Shown here in pieces: positions 45,680-64,000 of a DNA stretch of 64,000 nt; the stretch's first letter is position 1, and every line of letters begins with the position of its first letter. Below the pieces are notes generated by a model. The model did no database searches. It saw only the letters and a program-made list of their open reading frames with translations, and had not been told where the DNA came from. This stretch comes from Polymyxa betae A26-41 (taxonomy: Eukaryota; Protista; Endomyxa: Phytomyxea): assembly GCA_003693705.1 (NCBI GenBank), contig RBZT01000215.1, positions 83,552-147,551 of the forward strand, given 5' to 3'. The position numbers were made by a program, and so were the translations under genes.

Positions 45680-45783
45680 TGACCTTTTGTGTAATGTTAC
45701 CCAAGTGACCTTTTGTGTAATGTTACCCAAGTGACCTTTTGTGTAATGTTACCCAAGTGACCTTTTGTGTAATGTTACCCAAG
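45680..45783. repeat. Perfect tandem repeat, 26-bp unit TGACCTTTTGTGTAATGTTACCCAAG x4
   Basis: Four identical head-to-tail copies starting at 45680, 45706, 45732 and 45758. Confidence 0.97.
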
Positions 45784-45801
45784 CCAAAACATGCGTAATA
45801 A

Positions 45802-47828: not shown

Positions 47829-48198
47829 ATGTTGTTTCATGCTCATTATCCTTCTTTTGGAATTAAACTTTTATCTTCATTGCCTCAGGTTAAAGAATTC
47901 AAACAACGTTTCGCCTGAGCTTTCAATGTCATAATTATCTAATAATCCTGTAAATAATGATTAATTCGTGTCATCCAACCTGGATATTTCCAAGAACGTT
48001 CAATCCGGTTTCCTTAATGCTGTCTCCCTCATGTTCATTGTTAACTCCACTAAAGCTGTTCAGCGATACTTTCTATCATGGAATGTTTCAATTTCATAAA
48101 ACAACTGGGAGTTGATCGCCGTCTCAGCGCCTGTGTTGTCCGTCTCCATGTTGGTAGAATTATCTCAACTTGGCCACATAACGTGTTTATCATCATTA

Positions 48199-49257
48199 TT
48201 AGACGGAATCGTCAGCGAGTGGAATATATCCCAATACGACATTATATCCGGCGTTATCTAGATACTCACGTGGCAGCTTCTTCTTTACATGACGAATATA
48301 TACGATAAATGCAATGGTTAGCACAAGAGATGTGATGGACCAGGCGATCAATGGATGTCGATTTGTACCACATGCCCAAAGAAACTGAAACAAGAACGTT
48401 GATCTGAACAGGACTGGCCAGAACACAATCGCGAACGCCGCCAGATTCTCATTTAAGACTGTCCGCCGTGCTAGCTGCAAACCGATCAAATATCCGGTCA
48501 TGCAATGTGATGGGATGTAGAGAGCGGCGACCACGACTGAGATCAGCATTGGTGTCGCCAATCCTGCAGCTGAGTATGCTAATAGAAGGGATACAGTTAG
48601 GCCTTGATAGGTCCCGTACCCAAGACTTAATGCCATAGCTGTGAATAGACATCGGGATAGATCCAGATATTGCATCTGTCGAATCTCAATCGACGCCGTC
48701 TCATCGATCTCCACTTTGCTCTTGATCATGCGATATTTGAAGAATTCCTCGACTATGACAGACATGATTAAACTCATGTGCAGACAGAGATATGACAGAG
48801 ACTAACCCAGAACTTGTACGAATATGATCATCCATAATGTGGCGTATATAGAGCCAGTTCTATCAAATACAGGAAAAGCAAGTATTAAGAATATGGTCAA
48901 GAAGATCAACACTACAGGAGCCATAACGAATGCAACACCGAAATTTCGAATTGTGTGATTAATCAATATCAGCTGCGATGTTCGCGATCTATAAACGAGA
49001 TAGACGAATGGCAGAAAGAATAACGGATACGAGAACGAGAACGATGGGAATGCCCAGGCGATGAACGCCCAACCGGCAAGAATAACGCCCAATATCAGCC
49101 ATGACGTTTGATCTAAAGATTGCTCGCCGATCAGATAATCGTGATCGACAGAGAAGCCAGTGATCGTGGCGCCCGCCTGCTTCGATTTCCCGACAATCGT
49201 GGCGCCGAATTCGTCATCGCTAAGCGCGATGTTCTCCATATCGATGGCTTCTTTCAT
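48199..49257 (-). CDS. Polytopic membrane protein, PrsW-like (degenerate), 2 exons
   Basis: Many transmembrane segments. IVEEFFKY matches EExxK; LGYGTYQG, PSHCMTG and PVLFRST fall at the positions of PrsW motifs 2-4. Confidence 0.55.
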
Positions 49258-49409
49258 TTGCCAATCGTATGACCGGCGATTCTGGACCAATCAATTGTAA
49301 TACGGCCGATGCTGCTGACCACACTTAATTTTCTGCTTTTAAGCATGAATCACGTCGTGGATCGTTACTTGATCAATCGACGCCCATTGATCAACTTGTC
49401 GGATGTACC

Positions 49410-51673
49410 ATGACCTTGGAAGATTGGCGCCGTTCTATTTCCGCTGCCGGGACGATTGCATCAGTTCCTAACTAGTTCGTTTATCTCCAAACCCCAACCC
49501 TGGATGCCGCCCTCAAATCCTCTCAGCAGTATTCGTATGACATACGAATTCTGTATTGAAGGCATCACTTGTGCAAGGGAGGGGGATGCAACACGATCCC
49601 TTCGTCTGTTCAATGACGCTCTCCTGATAACACCCACGAGCTCAGCCGCCCATCTCTGTATCGGTCTGCGATATCTAGCTGAAGGAATGGCTCGTGATGC
49701 ATTACATCATTTCAATCAAGGTTTGGAGGTTGCATCTACTCCATACTGTCGTAGTCGTCTATTACGATGTCGTGCTCTTCTGCATCATTCCACACGAGAT
49801 TATGACGACGCCCTGGCGGATTTCGACGCCGCTCTGGTCCTGGACCCGGATTTCGCCGACGCCTACTACCTGCGAGGTCTGGTCTCGTACGACCTGAAAC
49901 GATTCGACAAATGTGTTGACGATATGACCAATGCCATTAAGCTATCAGATCCATCAGCTTCAGCAGCTGCTTATATGAATCGTGGTAATGCTTATACAGA
50001 GCTGGGTCGTTATACATCTGCTATTCGTGATCTTACAATGGCTATTGAATATGATACTCGTACATCTGTCATTTATTATAATCGTGCCAATGTATATTGT
50101 CTAACAAGAGATTTGCATCTGGCTCTGGCTGATTATACCAAATCTATTGAACTGGATCCGTATCATGCAAGTGCATACTTCAATCGTGGCAATACCTATC
50201 ATGAACTTGGTGAGTAGTGTGTTTTCCATTCAGTTTCTTCTAGGGTTTAGGGTTTCCTGATCCATGCTGTATATTGACTTTCTATTAGGACAATATCAAC
50301 TGGCTATTGCTGATTTCACCAATGCCATCGCCTTAGATCCAGCTGATGCAGCTCGATTTTTAGAATCACGTGGATGTTCATACTGTCGTCTGGGCCAGGT
50401 TGAATCCGCCTACGATGACTTCTCCAAAGCTCTTGGATTACGTCCAGATTCATCAACTGTTTACCTGAATCGGTCCACGGTTTTATTCCGTCTTGGTCGA
50501 TACAAGGAAGCTCTACATGATCTAAACAGCTGCTTGGTATTAAATCAGACCTGTGCTATGGCTTATACTAAGCGAGCTGATATTCACGTTCGATTCAAGA
50601 AATATGAGAAAGCAGCTCAAGATTTCACAACCGCTCTGGAACTCAATCCGGATGATGCCTACTCTTTGTATATGCGAGGTCGCTGCCGCCTGAAACTGGG
50701 CCAGCACGCCCAGGCGATCAGCGATTTCACGACCGTGATTCGGGTGGAGCCCACGTTCGTGCGTGCTTATTTGGAGCGTGCAGGAGCGTATTCATCGAAA
50801 TCGGTGCAGGAGTATCGTCTAGCAATTGACGATTATACGAAAGCGTTGGAGTTGAACCCGGATGATGCTGATGCATATGTTTCTAGAGCTAAGGCGGCTC
50901 AAGCTTTAAATCAGCAATGCCGAGCTATTCGAGATTGTGATGAGGCCCTGAAACTGGCTCCAGACAATGTTGACGCCATGGCCATGCGTGCCAAATGTTA
51001 TGCTGAATTCGGCGCCTTTGATCAAGCTCTACATTCGATTAATTCTGCTCTGCGACGATTACCAGAATCAGCACTTCTCTTAGCGTGTCGAGCTGATATT
51101 TACATGTCGCTTGGACGTCCTGATCTGGCTCTTGATGATTATGGTGAGGTTGTCGCTCTCTCTCCTGAATCCAATGCTGCCATCTCTGGCGTCGTTTTAG
51201 CACGACGCGCCCTCGGCCAAAACTCGATCGGCGCCCAGTTTGACGCTATTGAGTGGCATTTGCAAAAAGCCAGACGTCTATCGCTGTCGATCCCGAACCG
51301 AGAACGATTGGCGCGTGCTTTGCTGAGTCTGCGCCTGGACCAGTACGACGTGGTTCTGAAAGAGATCGATACGGCCCTGGAGGTTGAGACTGCTGAGGTT
51401 CGAGAGCATTTGTTGGAGAGCAGATCTATGATACAAGTACATCAGAGCAGCAAAGCAAGACAGATATTAGGATTAGGATTAGATGGAGTTGTAACTAGAT
51501 CATGGCAGATGGGAGCTCAACATCATACAAGATCTGATAGTCTTCGATCGGCTGTATTCAGTTCGGAACCGAAATCTGCTAATCGACGTCTTGTTGCACA
51601 TATGCAATGGAGAAGTAATCTTCGAAGAAGTATCTCTTCATTGCTCTCACGAAGTCGACATCCTCCATTGTAA
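49410..51673 (+). CDS. Tetratricopeptide-repeat protein (many TPRs); intron 50210-50288; start uncertain (49410 or 49504)
   Basis: Repeated 'AY.NRG..Y..LG.Y..AI.D.T.AIELDP' units across ORFs 49456-50217 and 50264-51673. Confidence 0.88.
50241..50255 (+). repeat. Intronic telomere-like repeat TAGGGTTTAGGGTTT
   Basis: Lies inside TPR-gene intron 50210-50288. Confidence 0.8.
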
Positions 51674-52050
51674 AATTAGCCCTCTATGCTGGAATTACCA
51701 GTTATAAATAAATATTCTATATCACAATCATGCTCTAGGCCAGTATAACGTCGTTGCTTCATCTGGAATTTGTTTTCGATTCATCAGTATAGTCGCGAAC
51801 GTGTTAGATTAAGTTGCATTCTGCATTGGTACCTACTGTATGAAGCTTTTGCATCTGCAGTGAAGGCTCTCAGAGAAAACCATATTTTAAGGCAGAATGG
51901 CGCAACCTCCTCTGTGTATAATGTTACCACTATTAAATAATGTATTCTGTTACATTGCATTCTCGAATATCTGTCGATCTTCATCTCAGATTTGAATATG
52001 ACCAAATCGGTTACTGGTACCAGACGGATCGTTCTTAGATTTGCTCAATC

Positions 52051-54479: not shown

Positions 54480-56112
54480 TTTGAGCAACCACAAGAATAT
54501 AGCTGAAACTGATTAAGAACTGTATTAAAATAATCCACTGCTGGCAGACTGGATGATTTGAAACAGGGCGGAACCAACGACAACGAAGACGAAAAATGCA
54601 ATCATCACAGGCCCAAGACTGCTGTTGCTTTCTGCTGATTTCGCCTAACACCATACTCACTATGAAATCAACTTGAACGTCACTGACAACACCGACCTTC
54701 GACCTGTTGTTAATCAGACCCCTCTTATTGACATTCTGATTGAAGAGTTCGGCAGCCTTTTTCCGGGGGTTAGCCTGTAAATCTTGGACGTGAGTGGCTG
54801 ACGCCCTGACGCGACATCGAACCTAACTCACCATGACGACGATGTCAAGCCAATGAGATAACGGAACAGGACAGAGATGAGTGAGACGTAACAATGATCG
54901 ACTGCTTGTGACGGCGGCACGTCGGTTCCGATCAACAGTCAAGAGACGAGGCCGCGCTCAACATTCGCGAATCATTTCCGTTACCGTGAATACCGTCCCC
55001 ACTGTCAGAGGATAGGGTTTGTGGCCAGTGGGAGGCCCCGCTTTCTCACGCGTCGTCGTCATTTCGTACTATTGATGAGTCGATGGCTGTCGCCCTTGGA
55101 TGAGCATAGTCTAAATTAAGATCCAATTCACAAATTGGACCGAAAACGATTATGATCGCCGCAAACGCAACGTTGTCATGATTGAAGAACCATATAAGCC
55201 AACAAAATGCTTGGGGAGTGTCTGCTGTTGCGAGATGGACATGCAGAGATCAGACACGAATGACTTGCTTATTGGATTCAAACTATAAGAGCAGCAGAAA
55301 GAACAACAGTAAATTTGATAGATAGATAATTAGAGATGTTTTTCAGTGGTACGTTGAGGAATTGGTCTCATTCTGGATCTTGTTTTAGGCGATACCTTTA
55401 TCTGATGCAGATAGAGCAGCAGAAAGCTGTCATAATTGCCAACATGAATAACAACCAACACAATTACATTTGAATATCAATGTATCAAAATGATGAACTC
55501 ATCAAGAATCCTCGAAATCAGCCCCTTATGTAGTCATGGTCCGTAAGGCAGGAAGGAGCCAGCAATGGATCCCAGCTCCCCGCATGTGTATGCGACCGTA
55601 CTGGCCCGCGCCAACCGAAAATCGGTTTTGTCTTGCACTGCTGTGATTCAGTGATTACGATTATAGAATCGATTGAGACCCATTGGTATTATGTTCCTTG
55701 CTATCATATCAATACAGCATTTGGAGGAATTTCTACCTAATGTACAGTGCCGACAGTCGTCCCTCCCATTATCATTGATGTCATTGTATTATATCTGATA
55801 TAACCAGCTCCATTTATATAGACACAATTGACGGCATCACATTTGAGATATCCATATAGGATGGAGCTCTGTTAATTGGTATTATACCCTTCATCATCTG
55901 TATTTATCTACATGTGTGCCAATAAAACAACCAAACTGCCGATTAGCTAAGTGCAAGTTATACTCAGTAATAGTTTCCGATTCAGTTATGGTAGAATTTG
56001 TCTAAGATGAAGAAGGTGAGAAGGTGACCAGATCGATCTATGTGTACTAGACATAATTTTCGTATTTCTGACTATGTATGATATATAATCAGCAGTAAAT
56101 TAGTATTAGGTC

Positions 56113-59100
56113 ATGTCATCAACAACAATTCCATTCAAACCACATCCGAAATCTCAGCAAGAATTTGAGTTTCGTGATGGCCAGCGTCCTCTAGCATTAG
56201 ATTGGTTAGATGAAGTTGGTAAATTCTATGAGAATCGTGCTCAAGATCCCCCTATACGTAAGACATCACGTATGTGCATCTGTATCTGCATGTCTCCATA
56301 TCATTATAATACTGATGAATAGGTCCTGGTACTAATGATGTATTAGAGATGATGATATTAGAGAATGCAGCAGATCTAGCACCTAATCTATCACATCATA
56401 GACGTATTATACGTCATGAAACTATCATACTATATCTCAAACTTGCTGCTGTATTCGATCGCACATTCGCCGTACAGGCCCAGTTCGAGGAGATCACCTC
56501 CCCAGATCGTATGATTATTGATATGGCGAGATCTCATGATATAATGAGTGTTGTGTGTATAGAGGAGAGATGGGTTATACCATCATTAATGAGATCAATT
56601 AGTAGCTGTATAACCCCAATGATTATTGGATTTGTAACAGGTCTAGAAGCCCATTATTTACAGGCTAATCTACATGTTAGAGATGTAGCTGTATCTGCAG
56701 TTACTGCACTTATACAATCTAATCGAAATATATTCCTACATAATGATCATTGTATGGATGTATGAAGTAACTAGATACTAATTGTAACTAACATATTGAT
56801 ATAGTGGCATCAATATGGAATTTAACCTTATTACTTGATGTTAATGATTGCCATCTTCCATCAATATTACTACCTGGAACACGTCTACCTATTATTATAT
56901 CATTACAATCATTAACAGATGTTATATGTCAAGGACATAGATCTCTAGTACGTGAACTTCTACGTCGGCTGCTGACCATGCCCGGGGCCAGTACGCCGGA
57001 GCGTGACGCCATTCGGGTCACGGTCCAGGGCTTGTTCCGCATTCTGGTTGATATCACATTCGGACATGGTACTGCTGATCGTAATGAAGGTGAAGCTGCT
57101 GCCAATAATGGAACACGACCTACACTAGCAGATGCATATGAGGCTATACAAGCTCTTGTCTCGGGACGTACCGAGGCCCAGTACGACCAGATTCACTGGG
57201 CGACTGCGACGCTGACCCGGATTGTGCGGCAGCAACAGTCGACGTTGCATCCGTCAACGAAATGGTCTGGAGATTGTTTAGGGTTTTAGGGTTTGGTTGT
57301 GACTTGTGTGTATAGGTTCTTAGATCAGTTAGTAATGCATCTATCACCTACATCTCCATCATTAGTTAGATATGGTATATGTCTAATAGTATCAGCTGTA
57401 ATAGAGGTATGGCCTGAATCAATAGATATCATACCAGATCTATATTCGAATATTATTAATTCATGTAATGATACATCATTAATAATACGAGATGTATCAC
57501 TATCTATTCTATATTCAATAGCTACATATCGCAATCTCCTATCATTAGTTGATCTTATACAAGCATATGATAGTATACGTCATGGATCTTGTTATATTAA
57601 TATACAGAATAATCATACAGGACATCAACAACCTGTTAGATCACATCCCGTTATATTATCTGATATTCTAGCTGAAGCTGTTATGTATGGACCTAATCTA
57701 TCATCATATCAACTGACATCATTACTGGCATCATCACGTTACATGTCGCCACAGATCCAACTCGACACGTTACATCTCGTCTGTCATTGGGCTAACAGAG
57801 CCCAGGATCTCGACCCACATCTGTAAGTGTGTGTTACAACGCATTCTAAACCCTAAAACCCTATGTTTAGTGTCCAACAATTATTACCAATGTTACAAAC
57901 ACGTCAATCTAATATTCAAATAGCGATCTTATCTATATTTCGTGCACTTAATCGTGCATTACCTACAATGTCCCGATCATTATTACGTAGCTCAGAGACA
58001 TATTTCCGTCAGTTATTATCTGGTCATGATCATACAGATACAGATGCAGATAATAGTATGATATTAGTATTAGATGTATTAGCTATGTTCCCATTACATG
58101 ATCTACCTGCTATACGTATACAGAATCTATTATCTCATCATTTAGGTCCATGTGCATTCTCTAGATCATGTCAATTACGTCATGCATTATATAATGTATT
58201 ATCGGGATCACGTAGATTCTGGATAACAAATGATCTATCATATTCGGCATTATGTATATTATTAATAGCGATTGGAGATGAAGATATTGATGCTGTTCAA
58301 TCAGCTGTTCGAGGGTTTCAGGATGTTAGTTCTGGACCTCAATGGAAGAGTGCTGCATCTACATCAACATTTCATTCATTATTAATTCGATCTGGTATTG
58401 CATTAAGACATAGAGATCAAGGTGTGATTATCGCTATTGCTTAATATTGGGTTATTAACTATCATATAGCTGTACGTATTAGTGCATATGATCATATAGT
58501 CAATGCTATATGTAATTGGACAGATCAGGATCCATTATATGGAATACTGGTCCACCTGACCCGATCTGGATCCATTGGCGATCTAGTACGACAACGTGTT
58601 GATGGATTATTAAGTGAATCTGGATCTGTTAATATATCATTATCATCAACATCCTTACAAGTATTAGATTCATGTTCACATAGTATATATTGGTATATAT
58701 TATTATTTAGTAAGTTGAATATATATATCAATCAGATACCGGCTGAGAGAGCTCTACGTTCTCTATTAACATCCACTGTATGTACTGCTGGCTGAAACCC
58801 TAAACCCTAACTAACACTTAGACAGCATGGTTATATTCGAGCTGCTGCTGTTGATACAACAATCAAGACCTGTTTCCGTGGTAGTATAGTTCATGGACGT
58901 ATTCTAGATCAAACTATAGCAGATGCTGTTGATGCATTGATTGTATCTGAAAATGAGGCCGTACAAGACAGCTGGATCTGCGTCCTGGATGGGCTGGTAC
59001 GGTATCAGATACCGGGTCTAAATCCCTGGCTTACAGCCCGATTATTACCAACATTAACAGATTTATATTCTGATAGACCATCTTCTGTATTACGTCATCT

Positions 59101-62100
59101 AGTTCATTTCCTTGATACATTAATTACCAATTATATCGCTAATACGTACGTTCCATCTTAGATTTTTCTCACAATCTTCTCTTTCTGTTTTCCAGTCAAT
59201 CGCTTCTGATTATTTTCGAGAACATTGCGCTTGTTCTGATGTTATATAATAGGGATATAATGGAATCAGCAGATGCAGTAATATCATCATGTATTGAGAG
59301 ATTACGTAATACAACCCGTCATCATCTAATAGCGAATATATCTGCTGCTGTACGTACATCATTAGAACAATTATATGGAATATTAGCAGAATGTGCTGCA
59401 CTATTACCTATTGCACATTTTGATGGAGAATCATATAGCGAGTTTCTATTAACAGATGTTAATGCTATGATTAATGATATTGGAGATCATGGTGGTGATC
59501 CACTTATTACTAATCTTACACAATATCAAAGACAATTGATTGGACGGGTTTCTATATCTGGACTTGGATCATGTAGACATACTACACTCATTCCAAAGGT
59601 AACATCAACACTGTCGTATATGTTACTGTTATCTGACATGATATAGATACTAACAACACTGTCATTGTTACTTTCCCATACTGATTATCAAGTACGTCGT
59701 GATGCTATTAGTAGTATATATCAGATACGTAATAATATGGGAGAACATGAGACTGAATTTCAATGGGATCTTAGTTCAGCTATATGGCAATCATTATCAT
59801 TATTATGTGATATAGATCTTGATGTTCGTGTACAATTAGAACGTGGATTATCACATGGACCTACATTATTATATATGTATATACAAGCTATACAAGCACC
59901 AGATCTATCGAAACAGATACAGCAAGCTATGTCTGTTCAGATTGATAGGGAGCGGTTCACCAGTCCAGACCAGTATGATTGCGGGTAAGCTGGCTCTGTT
60001 AGGGTTTTAGGGTTTCATATCAATGTATCTCTGTATATATCAGGATGATAGCATTATTGGCAGATTCTAATATTAGATCTACAATTGATGATGATTATGA
60101 GAAATATGCTGAGAAAGTCATGCAGATCCCACGTATGGATTCAGCATTTCTTGATAGGGTAAAACATTACATATTGGTCATGTTCCGCCGTACTGACCCG
60201 CTGTGTATGATAGGTCCGAGCTATTACTGCTAAATATATTCTATCTGGTCATGAACAGATTCATGCTGCTATACGTAATCTATGTAGATTTCTATCAGGT
60301 GGTACTACTGCTGGTAGTGCAGCTATTATTATCTCTCAGGTAACATAATGGATATAGGAGATGTAACATGTCATATTGATGTGTTATGTAGTTACTAGGT
60401 CTAGTATCAGATAATGCTGATATTCATGATGATATAATAGATCTGATATGTCGTCATATGGAATATAGTGTTACTGGTATTATACAGGATAAGATATATG
60501 GATTATGTGTAGCATTAACACAGATATCTACATATAGACCTATATTAACTGTACAACGGGTTGTATCATGGTCATGTTCTGCGTATGTAACATCATATAT
60601 GTCACTGTATATGTTACTGACCCTACATTTCTGATAGTAATCGTCATATTGATGTTAATGATGGATTAGTATATGCATTACATTCTGTTATAATACCAGT
60701 TATACATGATATAGATATAACACAATCTATTACATCTATACAGACATTCACATTATTGAATAGTCTACGTAGGGTATTACAGTCCACTGTATGTACTGAG
60801 CTGGAACCCTAAAACCCTAACCCTAAACTACTTGTATAGACTGCCACTAAATCGACTCAGAAATTAGCTCTAGATCTACATCTAGCTCTGACATCATTAT
60901 CAGATACAGGTCCAGTACTTATTACTAATCTATTAGATTTAATAGAAGCATTGCATGATCCAGATCTTCAAGATCAACTTATCCAAGCATTAAAACCGCA
61001 GTTTGCATCTGTAGATCAACATGATCCAGTTATACAAACCCTATTAGAACGTATTGATGAATATGAACAGAATGGGACTGTACAGGATCAGCAACGTGCG
61101 TTAACGTTACTCAGTATCGTATCGGATTCATTAGTTGATAACGATACATCATTGATGGGACGTGTATTAGCGTTACTGGCTGATACTGATCTACATGTAC
61201 GACGTCGTGCTATGAGGATGGTAACATATATATGTGGATGTATGTGTAACATGATACTGATATAGTATGTAACAGATAGTAAGTGGCTCATTAAGTGCGA
61301 GTATACAATCTCGTCTATGTCCAGTATTAGAACAACAACATAAACGTAATATTGATAGATCTATACATGGTAGATCACAATCTATTATACAAACTGCTGA
61401 CAAATTACAAGCTAATATGGCATTTCGATTACGTACATCATTCTTACGTATTAATGATTATTCAGTATTAAGTAATAATCATATATCAGCCACACATATG
61501 ACATCTAGTAACATATCTGATGACGAATCACATGGAACATCTACATCTACCATATCAGATGATCCACTTAATGTTACATATCTCTCATCAGAACGTTACA
61601 GTTGCATAGCTGCACGTTACCATAGTAATCTGATATTCAATCAAGATAAGATTGTTGATGATGCATCTACTGGTGAATATACAACACCACAACATATTAA
61701 TGCCATTGATCAGCAGGCCAGTACGGCCACATCAGCCAATACTGCTACTGGTGCTGCTACTACTGCTACATCCGCAGCAGGACGTACTGGCCCCGGCGGC
61801 GATGGGGATGGACGGCATACTATCGACGAGCAGTCCGAAGATCAGATATCGCTGGATGATGATGATGATCAGGCCGTACTGGTCCCTGTGCCGCCATCTG
61901 GAGCCGCATCCAGGCCATCGTTTCAACGTCGAACTACGGTGCAGTCCGTGACGGAGTCCGGGATGTCTCCCCGCGCACTCCGTAAGTTATCGTCCACGTC
62001 ATCAACATCGGGAGGTAATAGTCGGCGGACATCGTCATCTACATTATTTAATGGCGGGAATGGATCACGAGCTAGATTACGACGAGAATCAGCTCGAGGT

Positions 62101-63457
62101 GCTGCATCATCTATTAATGTATTAGATACTGGAGATAATAATGATCTATCTAATGATCATATTGCACTTAATGAACATGTTATTAATGATATGTCTGCTG
62201 AACAGATACAGACTATGTTAACTGCTACTGTTCAATCTACATCACATAATGCCAGTATGTTATCACACATGTTACATTCCTAACACTCACCTAATTATGT
62301 TACTCTATAGACTCACTATTGGATAAGCTGTTAGTAACATTAGAGGCGGATATACAATGCGATACAGGAGATGGATTACGTGCTGATATGAAATCACGCA
62401 TGCATTGTATTGGTGTATTAGTTAATCTAATAGCATCATTCAATCAATTAGATGATCGTGCTGAGACATCATTAGCACGATTACGTCGATTATGTTCATC
62501 ATTGCGACGGAGATGTATTAATCTACGTAATGATATTATTGATAAGATTGATGAAGATCTATTCTCTATAACTGGATTAAATCCCGTTATGATAGCTAAT
62601 CAATGTGATACAGATCGTTATGAATGTATGCAAGATTGTATACAGAGATCTATGATTGATATAGATTATAGACATGATCTTATCAAGCATGCATATAATA
62701 GACATATATCTATTGAATCAAATAATAGATATCTAAGTGCAATCGTTATATTTATTCAGGAGATTGTCAAGGGATTTGGACGTCTATATGCATATCTGAA
62801 TATAGAACAGGTCAGTGAATATCATGTTACAATGTGTCAGTCAACTGAGTAACATGAATATACAGATGACAACATTCTGTCATGGTATGGAATTTATGGT
62901 AGAAATCCTTACAGATGATCATGATGGTATACGTAAATCAAGTCGTGATGCATTACAACAGATTATAAGAGGACGTGAAGATGATCCACAGATCGAGTCA
63001 TTAGCTGCTCTATATGAGAAACTACTCCTGGGCCTGTACGATATCATCACCGATGATCTCAACGTCCAAGTTCTACGTCGCAAGAAGACCGATCTGTGCG
63101 CGGTTCTCGGTCTGCTTCTCCCTCAGGTAGATCATTGTGCAGGAGTCAGACGCGATCATTGACTCGATATCGTCCGTGTAGATTGCGAGCCATTCAGTTC
63201 AGGTCCGTGAGACATGCCTACGTCTGATTCTGTCCCTATGGGATGATCCCGACATACTGGTCCGCGATGTAGCTATTGATACAGTGCGGATCCTGGGTGC
63301 AGGACATCGTGTACCAGAGATTGATGCATTAATACGTCAGACAGGATCAGGTCCATCACAGCTTATGCAACATATTACAATTCGACTTAATAATGACACA
63401 TATGCTAGTAAGGAGAAGTTACAGAATCTTATGCAATGGCTCTTTAATAGAAGATAA
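56113..63457 (+). CDS. Very large (about 2100 aa) HEAT/ARM-like helical-repeat protein, 18 exons
   Basis: 17 GT-AG introns placed by eye keep one reading frame: 56270-56322, 56752-56804, 57265-57315, 57823-57870, 58422-58469, 58778-58825, 59146-59195, 59599-59646, 59985-60043, 60159-60213, 60340-60391, 60583-60637, 60789-60839, 61221-61275, 62255-62310, 62811-62865, 63127-63181. HEAT-like motifs LLADTDLHVRRRA, LLSHTDYQVRRDA, ILTDDHDGIRKSS, LWDDPDILVRDVA. TAA at 63455-63457. Confidence 0.75.
57277..57294 (+). repeat. Intronic telomere-like repeat TTTAGGGTTTTAGGGTTT
   Basis: Inside intron 57265-57315. Confidence 0.85.
57846..57863 (-). repeat. Intronic telomere-like repeat (C-strand on +: CTAAACCCTAAAACCCTA)
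   Basis: Inside intron 57823-57870. Confidence 0.85.
58795..58810 (-). repeat. Intronic telomere-like repeat (C-strand on +: AAACCCTAAACCCTAA)
   Basis: Inside intron 58778-58825. Confidence 0.85.
59999..60015 (+). repeat. Intronic telomere-like repeat TTAGGGTTTTAGGGTTT
   Basis: Inside intron 59985-60043. Confidence 0.85.
60805..60827 (-). repeat. Intronic telomere-like repeat (C-strand on +: AACCCTAAAACCCTAACCCTAAA)
   Basis: Inside intron 60789-60839. Confidence 0.85.
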
Positions 63458-63690
63458 ATACACGTCCACATACGGTCTGGTACGACCAGTACCTTTTGTC
63501 AGACGTAGAAACGTCTCATATATTTGATTAATCGTACCATAAGTCTGTTTAGGTTGTATAATCTGTAATCTATCTATCCGTCATTTATCAAAGGTTGATA
63601 TCGAACTGCAATGAGACTGACCAAATATCAGCAAATGTACTTGATAGAATATTTCAACAGACCGAAACAAATATGGAAGAAACTGATTGG

Positions 63691-63717
63691 TATTACTACG
63701 TAGATCACGTAGTAATA
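63691..63717. repeat. Perfect 11-bp inverted repeat TATTACTACGT-agatc-ACGTAGTAATA
   Basis: The arms are exact reverse complements; a third partial copy (TTACTACGT) follows at about 63720. Confidence 0.7.
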
Positions 63718-64000
63718 AATTACTACGTTTAACGTCTGCTTATACACAGAGACAGGTCGCCAAATGGTACAATAACAGCACACCAGACTGATATAAATCA
63801 GAACTCACTTTACAGATGGTTAACTGCAGATTCATATAAAAAGTATTGACATTGTTAGGGTTTTAACGAGCAGAGATCTACTATTGACAATCGTGATGAG
63901 ATACCGGTAGAGATATACAGATACATTATATGTTAGTTCTGGGATTTCATACAGTTTCAATCAGGTAATGATTCTTTATAGAAGATGACAATATTACGGA

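What the first reader, a model, noticed from the sequence alone, without database searches (positions are those of the whole stretch)
57265..60839. Telomere-type repeats placed in the short introns of one gene, in both orientations
Seen: five of the 17 introns of the HEAT-like gene each carry 2-3 tandem units of T(2-4)AGGG. Introns 57265-57315 and 59985-60043 have the G-strand on the sense strand; 57823-57870, 58778-58825 and 60789-60839 have the C-strand. I saw no such tandem repeats in this gene's exons, and none in the dozens of introns of ordinary genes in the window. Established: TTTTAGGG/TTTAGGG are telomeric repeats, and short interstitial AAACCCTA 'telo-boxes' are bound by Myb/TRF-type proteins in plants. 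Inference: because orientation varies, the signal probably acts on DNA (protein docking, chromatin marking, nuclear tethering) rather than on the RNA. Alternatively these introns arose where telomerase or telomeric DNA patched double-strand breaks. Either would be an undescribed intron-borne telo-box system marking a specific class of genes.
Basis: partly seen in the sequence, partly recalled or inferred. Interest (0 to 1): 0.88.

Follow-up and report, generated by a model that had tools for sequence, protein, structure and literature searches.

The report
Telomere-like docking sites inside short introns
In the sugar-beet root parasite Polymyxa betae, two-unit copies of the telomere repeat occur at over a thousand non-coding places and pile up, in either direction, in the tiny introns of genes with an unusual A/T pattern; they most likely serve as landing sites for a telomere-type DNA-binding protein inside gene bodies.

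Summary
Confirmed. All five introns are spliced GT..AG in RNA contigs and carry 2-3 telomere units, two on the G strand and three on the C strand. The motif is not private to this gene or to introns: about 1,480 exact two-unit matches against 25 for reversed controls; roughly a third to a half of the T3/T4 forms lie in short introns, the rest elsewhere. Host genes share no function, but motif introns sit in ApT-rich, AA/TT-poor stretches (P=7e-4), and this gene is enriched (5/19 against 4/246 introns). Fixed register (TAGGG-T2-4-AGGG-TTT), a peak at two units, unchanged intron length and no junction repeats fit a protein-binding site, like the S. pombe Teb1 box or plant telo-box, better than telomerase scars. 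Six other introns of the gene each hold exactly two copies of a second motif (GTAACAT), any orientation. Binding and conservation are untested. First readers of this scan noted the same intronic telo-boxes on other pieces of this genome. New variant of a known kind.

The parts
56113..63457 (+). HEAT/ARM-repeat gene, about 2100 codons, 17-19 introns; start and last introns predicted only
   Evidence: RNA joints 56270-61275; stop-free frame; ab initio model; exon hits to HEAT/armadillo-type proteins of chytrids and others
56000..63500 (.). ApT/TpA-rich, AA/TT-poor composition domain covering the gene (exons and introns)
   Evidence: ApT o/e 1.4-1.5, AA and TT o/e 0.5-0.7; Lys 18 of 1724 codons; synonymous sites
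57265..57315 (+). Intron with G-strand two-unit motif at 57277-57294
57823..57870 (+). Intron with C-strand two-unit motif at 57848-57863; no intron at this position in a 44%-identical relative
58778..58825 (+). Intron with C-strand two-unit motif at 58795-58810; donor region similar to intron 60789
59985..60043 (+). Intron with G-strand two-unit motif at 59999-60015
60789..60839 (+). Intron with C-strand three-unit motif at 60805-60827
59599..59646 (+). Intron with two copies of second motif GTAACAT/ATGTTAC (59599, 59620; convergent)
60340..60391 (+). Intron with two copies of second motif (60340, 60363; direct)
60583..60637 (+). Intron with two copies of second motif (60587, 60611; convergent)
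61221..61275 (+). Intron with two copies of second motif (61221, 61246; direct)
62255..62310 (+). Predicted intron with two copies of second motif (62269, 62297; direct, minus strand)
   Evidence: outside the stretch laid with reads
62811..62865 (+). Predicted intron with two copies of second motif (62824, 62849; divergent)
   Evidence: outside the stretch laid with reads
50210..50288 (+). Predicted intron of the TPR gene with a G-strand two-unit motif at 50241-50255
   Evidence: not checked with reads

Best explanation
The motif is a two-unit telo-box, (T)TAGGG-T2-4-AGGG-TTT, kept as a binding site for a telomere-type Myb protein (two Myb domains, or a dimer) that also works inside chromosomes. 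Shown: the motif is genome-wide, non-coding, orientation-free, fixed in register and size, and clusters in short introns of ApT-rich, AA/TT-poor gene bodies. Inferred: in a compact genome the 50-nt introns are the only non-coding room inside long genes, so sites needed along a gene body are written there. Bound protein then sets local chromatin (nucleosome placement, a barrier to silencing, or Polycomb recruitment), and the odd base composition is the long-term footprint of that chromatin state. A second paired motif in six other introns of the gene would be a second factor's site. Some sites spread by ectopic copying (introns 58778 and 60789). Which chromatin effect follows is not determined.
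For: 372 T4, 558 T3 and 549 T2 two-unit matches against 8, 8 and 9 reversed controls. Of 27 held sites, the base after the last AGGG is T in 27, TT in 26, TTT in 21, then random; T precedes in 24. Single units are in excess only in the plant telo-box register TAGGGTTT (12 against 3-4), not as TTAGGG (46 against 42-52); about 15 excess singles for 12 tandems, 2 of them triple. The T2 form equals the minimal Teb1 site AGGGTTAGGGTT (PMC4839565). Intron-like sites: 65 against 27 expected for T4, 80 against 41 for T3, both orientations. Motif introns median 51 nt against 50. Composition link P=7e-4 outside this gene. Second motif 12 against 0.45, mutually exclusive with telo introns. The genome encodes 31 Myb matches, several in tandem, and a VEFS-box Polycomb subunit.
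Against: No binding data. I could not read the Myb genes, so a telobox-type recognition helix is untested; no TRF dimerisation domain was found (uninformative). No conservation test was possible: the one relative found lacks the intron. Spacing varies from T2 to T4 whereas Teb1 is stringent. Enrichment in introns over other non-coding DNA may be only about 1.5-2 fold, since the true intron share is uncertain. The composition link rests on 8 predicted introns, and its direction of cause is unknown.
Confidence: 0.58

Rival explanations
1. Neutral interstitial telomeric scars: telomerase adds 2-3 units while breaks are repaired; they survive only in non-coding DNA, and break-prone domains collect many of them along with an odd mutation spectrum.
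For: TERT is encoded. The unit mix T2-T4 matches the telomere-like arrays. This route is documented for short ITS in mammals (PMC7215372) and proposed for plant telo-boxes (PMC3022908). Both orientations and exon exclusion follow naturally.
Against: Too few single units for a decaying or geometric length series; sharp TTT end; no added intron length; intronic sites favour T3/T4 while the arrays are mostly T2; a second, non-telomeric paired motif behaves the same way in the same gene.
Confidence: 0.22
2. Intron birth from telomeric DNA: a patch of telomere repeats was inserted into an exon and spliced out, since G-strand repeats supply GT and TAG and C-strand repeats supply CTAAC.
For: The intron at 57823 is absent from a relative. 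In some introns the donor overlaps the repeat (L010); some carry a decayed third unit.
Against: The same relative also lacks the motif-free intron 58422 and has one of its own, so positions are simply not shared. Two thirds of each intron is non-telomeric while the core is perfect. Letters shared at the two junctions average 1.0 for motif introns and 1.3 for the others. Half or more of the sites are not in introns.
Confidence: 0.08
3. RNA-level splicing signals: G-runs as intronic enhancers on one strand, CCCTAAC as branch point on the other.
For: C-strand motifs often end in CTAAC 8-25 nt from the acceptor; intron 57265 has a weak GTCTG donor.
Against: Needs two unrelated mechanisms for one reverse-complement pair with the same flank consensus; many sites are outside introns; position within the intron varies; about 98% of other introns splice without it.
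Confidence: 0.06
4. A small mobile or copied intron family (introner-like) carries the motif.
For: Introns 58778 and 60789 match at 26 of 33 positions around the donor, 18 of 25 in the exon (P about 1e-6). A few near-identical introns occur on other contigs.
Against: The other three introns here and most genome-wide share nothing but the motif; no terminal repeats or target duplications; similarity runs into the exon, as for gene conversion or segment duplication.
Confidence: 0.06

Closest known systems
Plant telo-box (AAACCCTA) bound by TRB Myb proteins, which recruit PRC2 and PEAT (PMC10167121, PMC3022908)
   Same: Short interstitial telomere motif in the same register; genome-wide; found near gene starts
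   Different: One unit suffices in plants, here two in tandem. Arabidopsis telo-boxes are not enriched in introns overall (3829 against 3945 expected) and favour the first two; here they lie in middle and late 50-nt introns. TRBs are plant-specific.
S. pombe Teb1 HisBox; Tay1-type two-Myb proteins; budding-yeast Tbf1 and STAR elements (PMC4839565, PMC6410037)
   Same: Two-unit site AGGGTTAGGGTT, identical to the T2 form here; telomere-type protein acting as general regulator, nucleosome excluder or insulator
   Different: Known sites are in promoters and subtelomeres, not clustered in gene-body introns; spacing here is variable; no link to a composition domain is described
Short interstitial telomeric sequences inserted at repaired breaks in mammals (PMC7215372)
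   Same: Telomere units inside chromosomes, both orientations, absent from exons, present in introns
   Different: Mammalian ones are rare, longer and randomly placed (31% in introns, as expected); here over a thousand in 27 Mb, peaked at two units and clustered by gene
AMT1-dependent ApT adenine methylation in gene bodies (PMC7145601)
   Same: ApT is the dinucleotide gained in the host genes; AMT1 is reported in Rhizaria
   Different: Only a METTL4-like MT-A70 gene was seen; no modification data; no nucleosome-scale period found

Membership tests
Telo-box / telomere-Myb cis-element | Matches the organism's telomere repeat | tested here: met
   Array at the start of contig C97 (6-80, C strand) and long arrays on C125 and C371 are mixed T2>T3>T4 AGGG; P. 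brassicae uses T4AG3 (PMC6823432)
Telo-box / telomere-Myb cis-element | Short (1-3 units), interstitial, above chance genome-wide | tested here: met
   against reversed controls
Telo-box / telomere-Myb cis-element | Concentrated in promoters and 5' UTRs | tested here: inconclusive
   Half or more are outside introns and some lie 170-240 nt before a predicted start, but no genome annotation was on hand
Telo-box / telomere-Myb cis-element | A telobox-type Myb protein is encoded | tested here: inconclusive
Telo-box / telomere-Myb cis-element | Bound in vivo and affects chromatin or transcription | not testable with these tools
   needs ChIP, DAP-seq or EMSA
Break-repair ITS | Telomerase present | tested here: met
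   Telomerase_RBD on C940
Break-repair ITS | Empty orthologous site with end-joining marks | tested here: inconclusive
   only a distant relative was found; nucleotide-level comparison impossible
Break-repair ITS | Random placement in non-coding DNA | tested here: not met
   5/19 against 4/246 introns, P=1e-4; composition link P=7e-4
Introner element | Many introns alike over their whole length, with target duplications | tested here: not met
   one similar pair only, 5' half and exon end; no junction repeats
Intronic snoRNA or other known RNA | Rfam match | tested here: not met
   0 matches in 55000-64000

The most novel reading that the evidence does not exclude
Short introns of ApT-rich genes in Polymyxa are used as a DNA address code: a telomere-type two-unit site and a paired GTAACAT site, one kind per intron and in any orientation, recruit factors that set a gene-body chromatin or base-modification state strong enough to rewrite codon and amino-acid use.
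Probability: 0.25. Interest if true: 0.88.

Novelty: new variant of a known kind. Interest (0 to 1): 0.64.

Why it matters
Almost nothing is known of gene control in plasmodiophorids, which cannot be cultured away from roots. A defined, abundant site with candidate readers gives a first testable handle on it. If the best reading holds, telomere-type regulators act from inside gene bodies through minimal introns, which gives such introns a DNA-level job and links a binding motif to a domain-wide shift in base, codon and amino-acid use. It also shows that the P. betae telomere unit is mixed T2-4AGGG, unlike the T4AG3 of P. brassicae.

Tried and rejected
Single functional gene class: rejected. 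Nucleosome-scale phasing of ApT, GC or introns: a 165-200 nt hint vanished with introns masked; intron spacing P=0.21. 5mC-driven mutation as cause of the domain: no C5 methyltransferase match. AMT1: not seen, loose first look, inconclusive. Orthologues in P. brassicae or S. subterranea: three protein searches, four contig look-ups and one metagenome protein scan gave no usable genomic DNA. A metagenome pattern scan found other eukaryotes with long telomere-like tracts but no plasmodiophorid I could identify. Rfam blank. Paper searches found no report of intronic telomere motifs in plasmodiophorids; the library lacks most subscription papers. The spliced model was searched exon by exon by reference; the joined protein was not searched or folded (exons were joined only inside scripts to check frame and codon use).
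Full report
Source. The window is part of contig C413 of an assembly of 27,085,814 bases in 1001 contigs. The draft genome of Polymyxa betae has 27,085,946 bp in 1001 contigs and 45.1% GC (PMC6328671). I take the organism to be P. betae; this is an inference from the match.

The observation. Contigs of four public runs from two studies skip 15 listed GT..AG stretches between 56270 and 61275, including all five motif introns, and the joined exons read without a stop for 1724 codons. The protein has weak Pfam support on its own, but its exons match HEAT/armadillo-type proteins of chytrids and others in order along their length. Chance is excluded: 4 matches against 0.00 in shuffles of the window, 12 tandems in 264 kb against 0.3. 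A sixth motif lies in the predicted intron of the TPR gene at 50241.

The telomere unit. No run of four T4 units exists in the assembly. Long arrays at the very start of contig C97 and on C125 and C371 are mixtures, by my count from positions about 60% TTAGGG, 25% TTTAGGG and 15% TTTTAGGG. So the intron motif is made of the organism's own repeat. That C125 and C371 arrays are chromosome ends was not checked.

Genome-wide spread. Exact two-unit forms number 372 (T4), 558 (T3) and 549 (T2), against 8, 8 and 9 for reversed controls; these totals include overlaps and the telomere arrays. To estimate the intronic share without an annotation I counted sites with a strong donor (GTRWG) 3-30 nt before and YAG 3-30 nt after. 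Distinct sites: T4 34 G-strand and 31 C-strand, 27 expected in all; T3 31 and 49, 41 expected; T2 25 G-strand, 20 expected (chance rates). This gives roughly 50%, 35% and 10-20% intronic. The estimates are crude because they lean on my own gene predictor, which recovered 14 of 15 confirmed introns but misses genes. In 264 kb of contiguous sequence 9 of 12 tandems lie in predicted short introns and none in 116 kb of predicted coding sequence. Of ten loci taken in contig order, about four central motifs were intron-like and the rest intergenic or promoter-like. Absence from exons is expected, since the repeat carries stops in either direction. Enrichment in introns over other non-coding DNA is probably real but modest.

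Which genes. Motif introns occur in genes for a TPR protein, coproporphyrinogen oxidase, a TIG-repeat giant, an LRR protein, a kinase, an adenylate-kinase-like and a Hydin/CFAP65-like protein: no shared function. They do cluster: 5 of 19 introns here against 4 of 246 elsewhere (P=1e-4), and position lists show similar clusters, for example at least seven sites in C45:28.6-34.3 kb. The host gene lies in a domain with ApT o/e 1.4-1.5 and AA/TT o/e 0.5-0.7. There, synonymous sites before T are A in 61-77%, NAY codons end in T about 90% of the time, and lysine falls to 1%. Outside this gene, eight motif introns lie in more AA/TT-poor and ApT-rich surroundings than 242 other introns (P=7e-4 and 6e-4); one of the eight does not. 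Non-intronic sites show no such link.

Shape of the motif. After the last AGGG the next bases are T in 27 of 27 held sites, TT in 26, TTT in 21, and then random; T precedes in 24. Single units are in excess only as TAGGGTTT, the plant telo-box, not as TTAGGG. There are about 15 excess singles for 12 tandems, of which 2 are triple; a series falling from singles would need several times more. Motif introns are not longer (51 against 50 nt), the motif floats within them, and junctions show no extra repeats. In S. pombe the two-Myb protein Teb1 needs exactly AGGGTTAGGGTT and binds it at histone promoters (PMC4839565). These features fit a binding site under selection better than leftovers of telomerase.

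A second motif. Six of the twelve introns without telomere units hold exactly two copies each, in direct, convergent or divergent arrangement; 12 observed against 0.45 in shuffles; none in the five telomere-type introns. Three copies double as the donor site. Genome-wide the pairs are in excess: 114 against 14 direct (perhaps a quarter from coding repeats), 21 against 5 convergent, 14 against 3 divergent. Eleven of the 17 introns examined thus carry one of two orientation-free paired motifs. This is hard to explain by telomerase alone.

Copying. Introns 58778 and 60789 match at 26 of 33 positions around the donor, including 18 of the last 25 exon bases (P about 1e-6 over all pairs). One was copied or converted from the other, so some sites spread by ectopic recombination. 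The rest share only the motif.

Relatives. A 1.4-kb contig from an unnamed GC-rich relative (44% identity) lacks the motif intron 57823, but also lacks the motif-free intron 58422 and has an intron of its own. It says nothing specific about the motif. No plasmodiophorid orthologue with genomic DNA could be reached.

Mechanism, shown and inferred. Shown: a spliced, orientation-free, two-unit telomere motif, genome-wide, clustered in introns of compositionally odd genes. Inferred: a telomere-type Myb factor binds it; candidates exist (31 Myb matches) but were not read. Inferred further: binding sets chromatin along the gene body, as Tbf1-type factors exclude nucleosomes and block silencing (PMC6410037) or plant TRBs recruit PRC2 (PMC10167121); a VEFS-box gene is present. 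The cause of the ApT-rich pattern is open: no C5 methyltransferase and only a METTL4-like MT-A70 gene were seen.

Comparison and novelty. It works most like a telo-box or Teb1 box. Membership meets the sequence tests; binding is untested. It differs in lying through gene bodies in 50-nt introns: in Arabidopsis telo-boxes are not enriched in introns (PMC3022908), and human short ITS fall in introns at the random rate (PMC7215372). I found no published report for plasmodiophorids. First readers of this scan noted the same pattern on several other pieces of this genome; those notes are unchecked and are not counted as support.

Limits. The spliced model was searched exon by exon; the joined search was left out. 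Verdict: real, genome-wide, new variant of a known kind; interest 0.64.

Noticed in passing
window 59599-62865: Six introns each hold exactly two copies of GTAACAT/ATGTTAC, in all orientations, never together with the telomere motif; pairs are also in excess genome-wide.
   Followed up: partly
window 56000-63500; also about 48000-52000; L012 (C574 15-24 kb); L022 (C574 117-120 kb); L005: ApT/TpA-rich, AA/TT-poor domains that shift codon and amino-acid use (Lys 1% in the HEAT gene), broken by short GC-rich patches; cause unknown.
   Followed up: partly
window 58753-58812 and 60764-60822: Two donor regions 2011 nt apart are about 80% alike across exon end and intron start; likely ectopic copying or gene conversion.
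   Followed up: yes
window 57205-57264, 57763-57822, 59925-59984: GC3 in the 60 nt before motif introns is 0.46 against 0.21 before other introns of the gene; small numbers.
   Followed up: no
G000 C97:6-80, C125:10225-10337, C371:11982-12160: Telomere-like arrays are mixed T2/T3/T4 AGGG, unlike the uniform T4AG3 reported for P. brassicae.
   Followed up: partly
L068:1586-2117 and 1-340; other loci from samples Ga0075108 and Ga0075109: A GC-rich eukaryote in metagenomes has gene-interrupting tracts of several hundred bases of degenerate TTTAGGG repeats that look like introns; a larger-scale parallel in another organism.
   Followed up: no
L013:7423-8240 (minus): The only MT-A70 match in the genome looks METTL4-like (DPPW motif); no AMT1 or METTL3 match in a loose first look.
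   Followed up: partly
L032:1139-1141: The relative's orthologue has TAG where P. betae has TGG (Trp) in an otherwise continuous frame; error, broken copy or recoding not resolved.
   Followed up: no
window 45680-45799: Four perfect copies of a 26-nt unit, each containing ATGTTAC.
   Followed up: no
window 63855-63864: Single telomere-like unit about 400 nt downstream of the HEAT gene's predicted stop.
   Followed up: no
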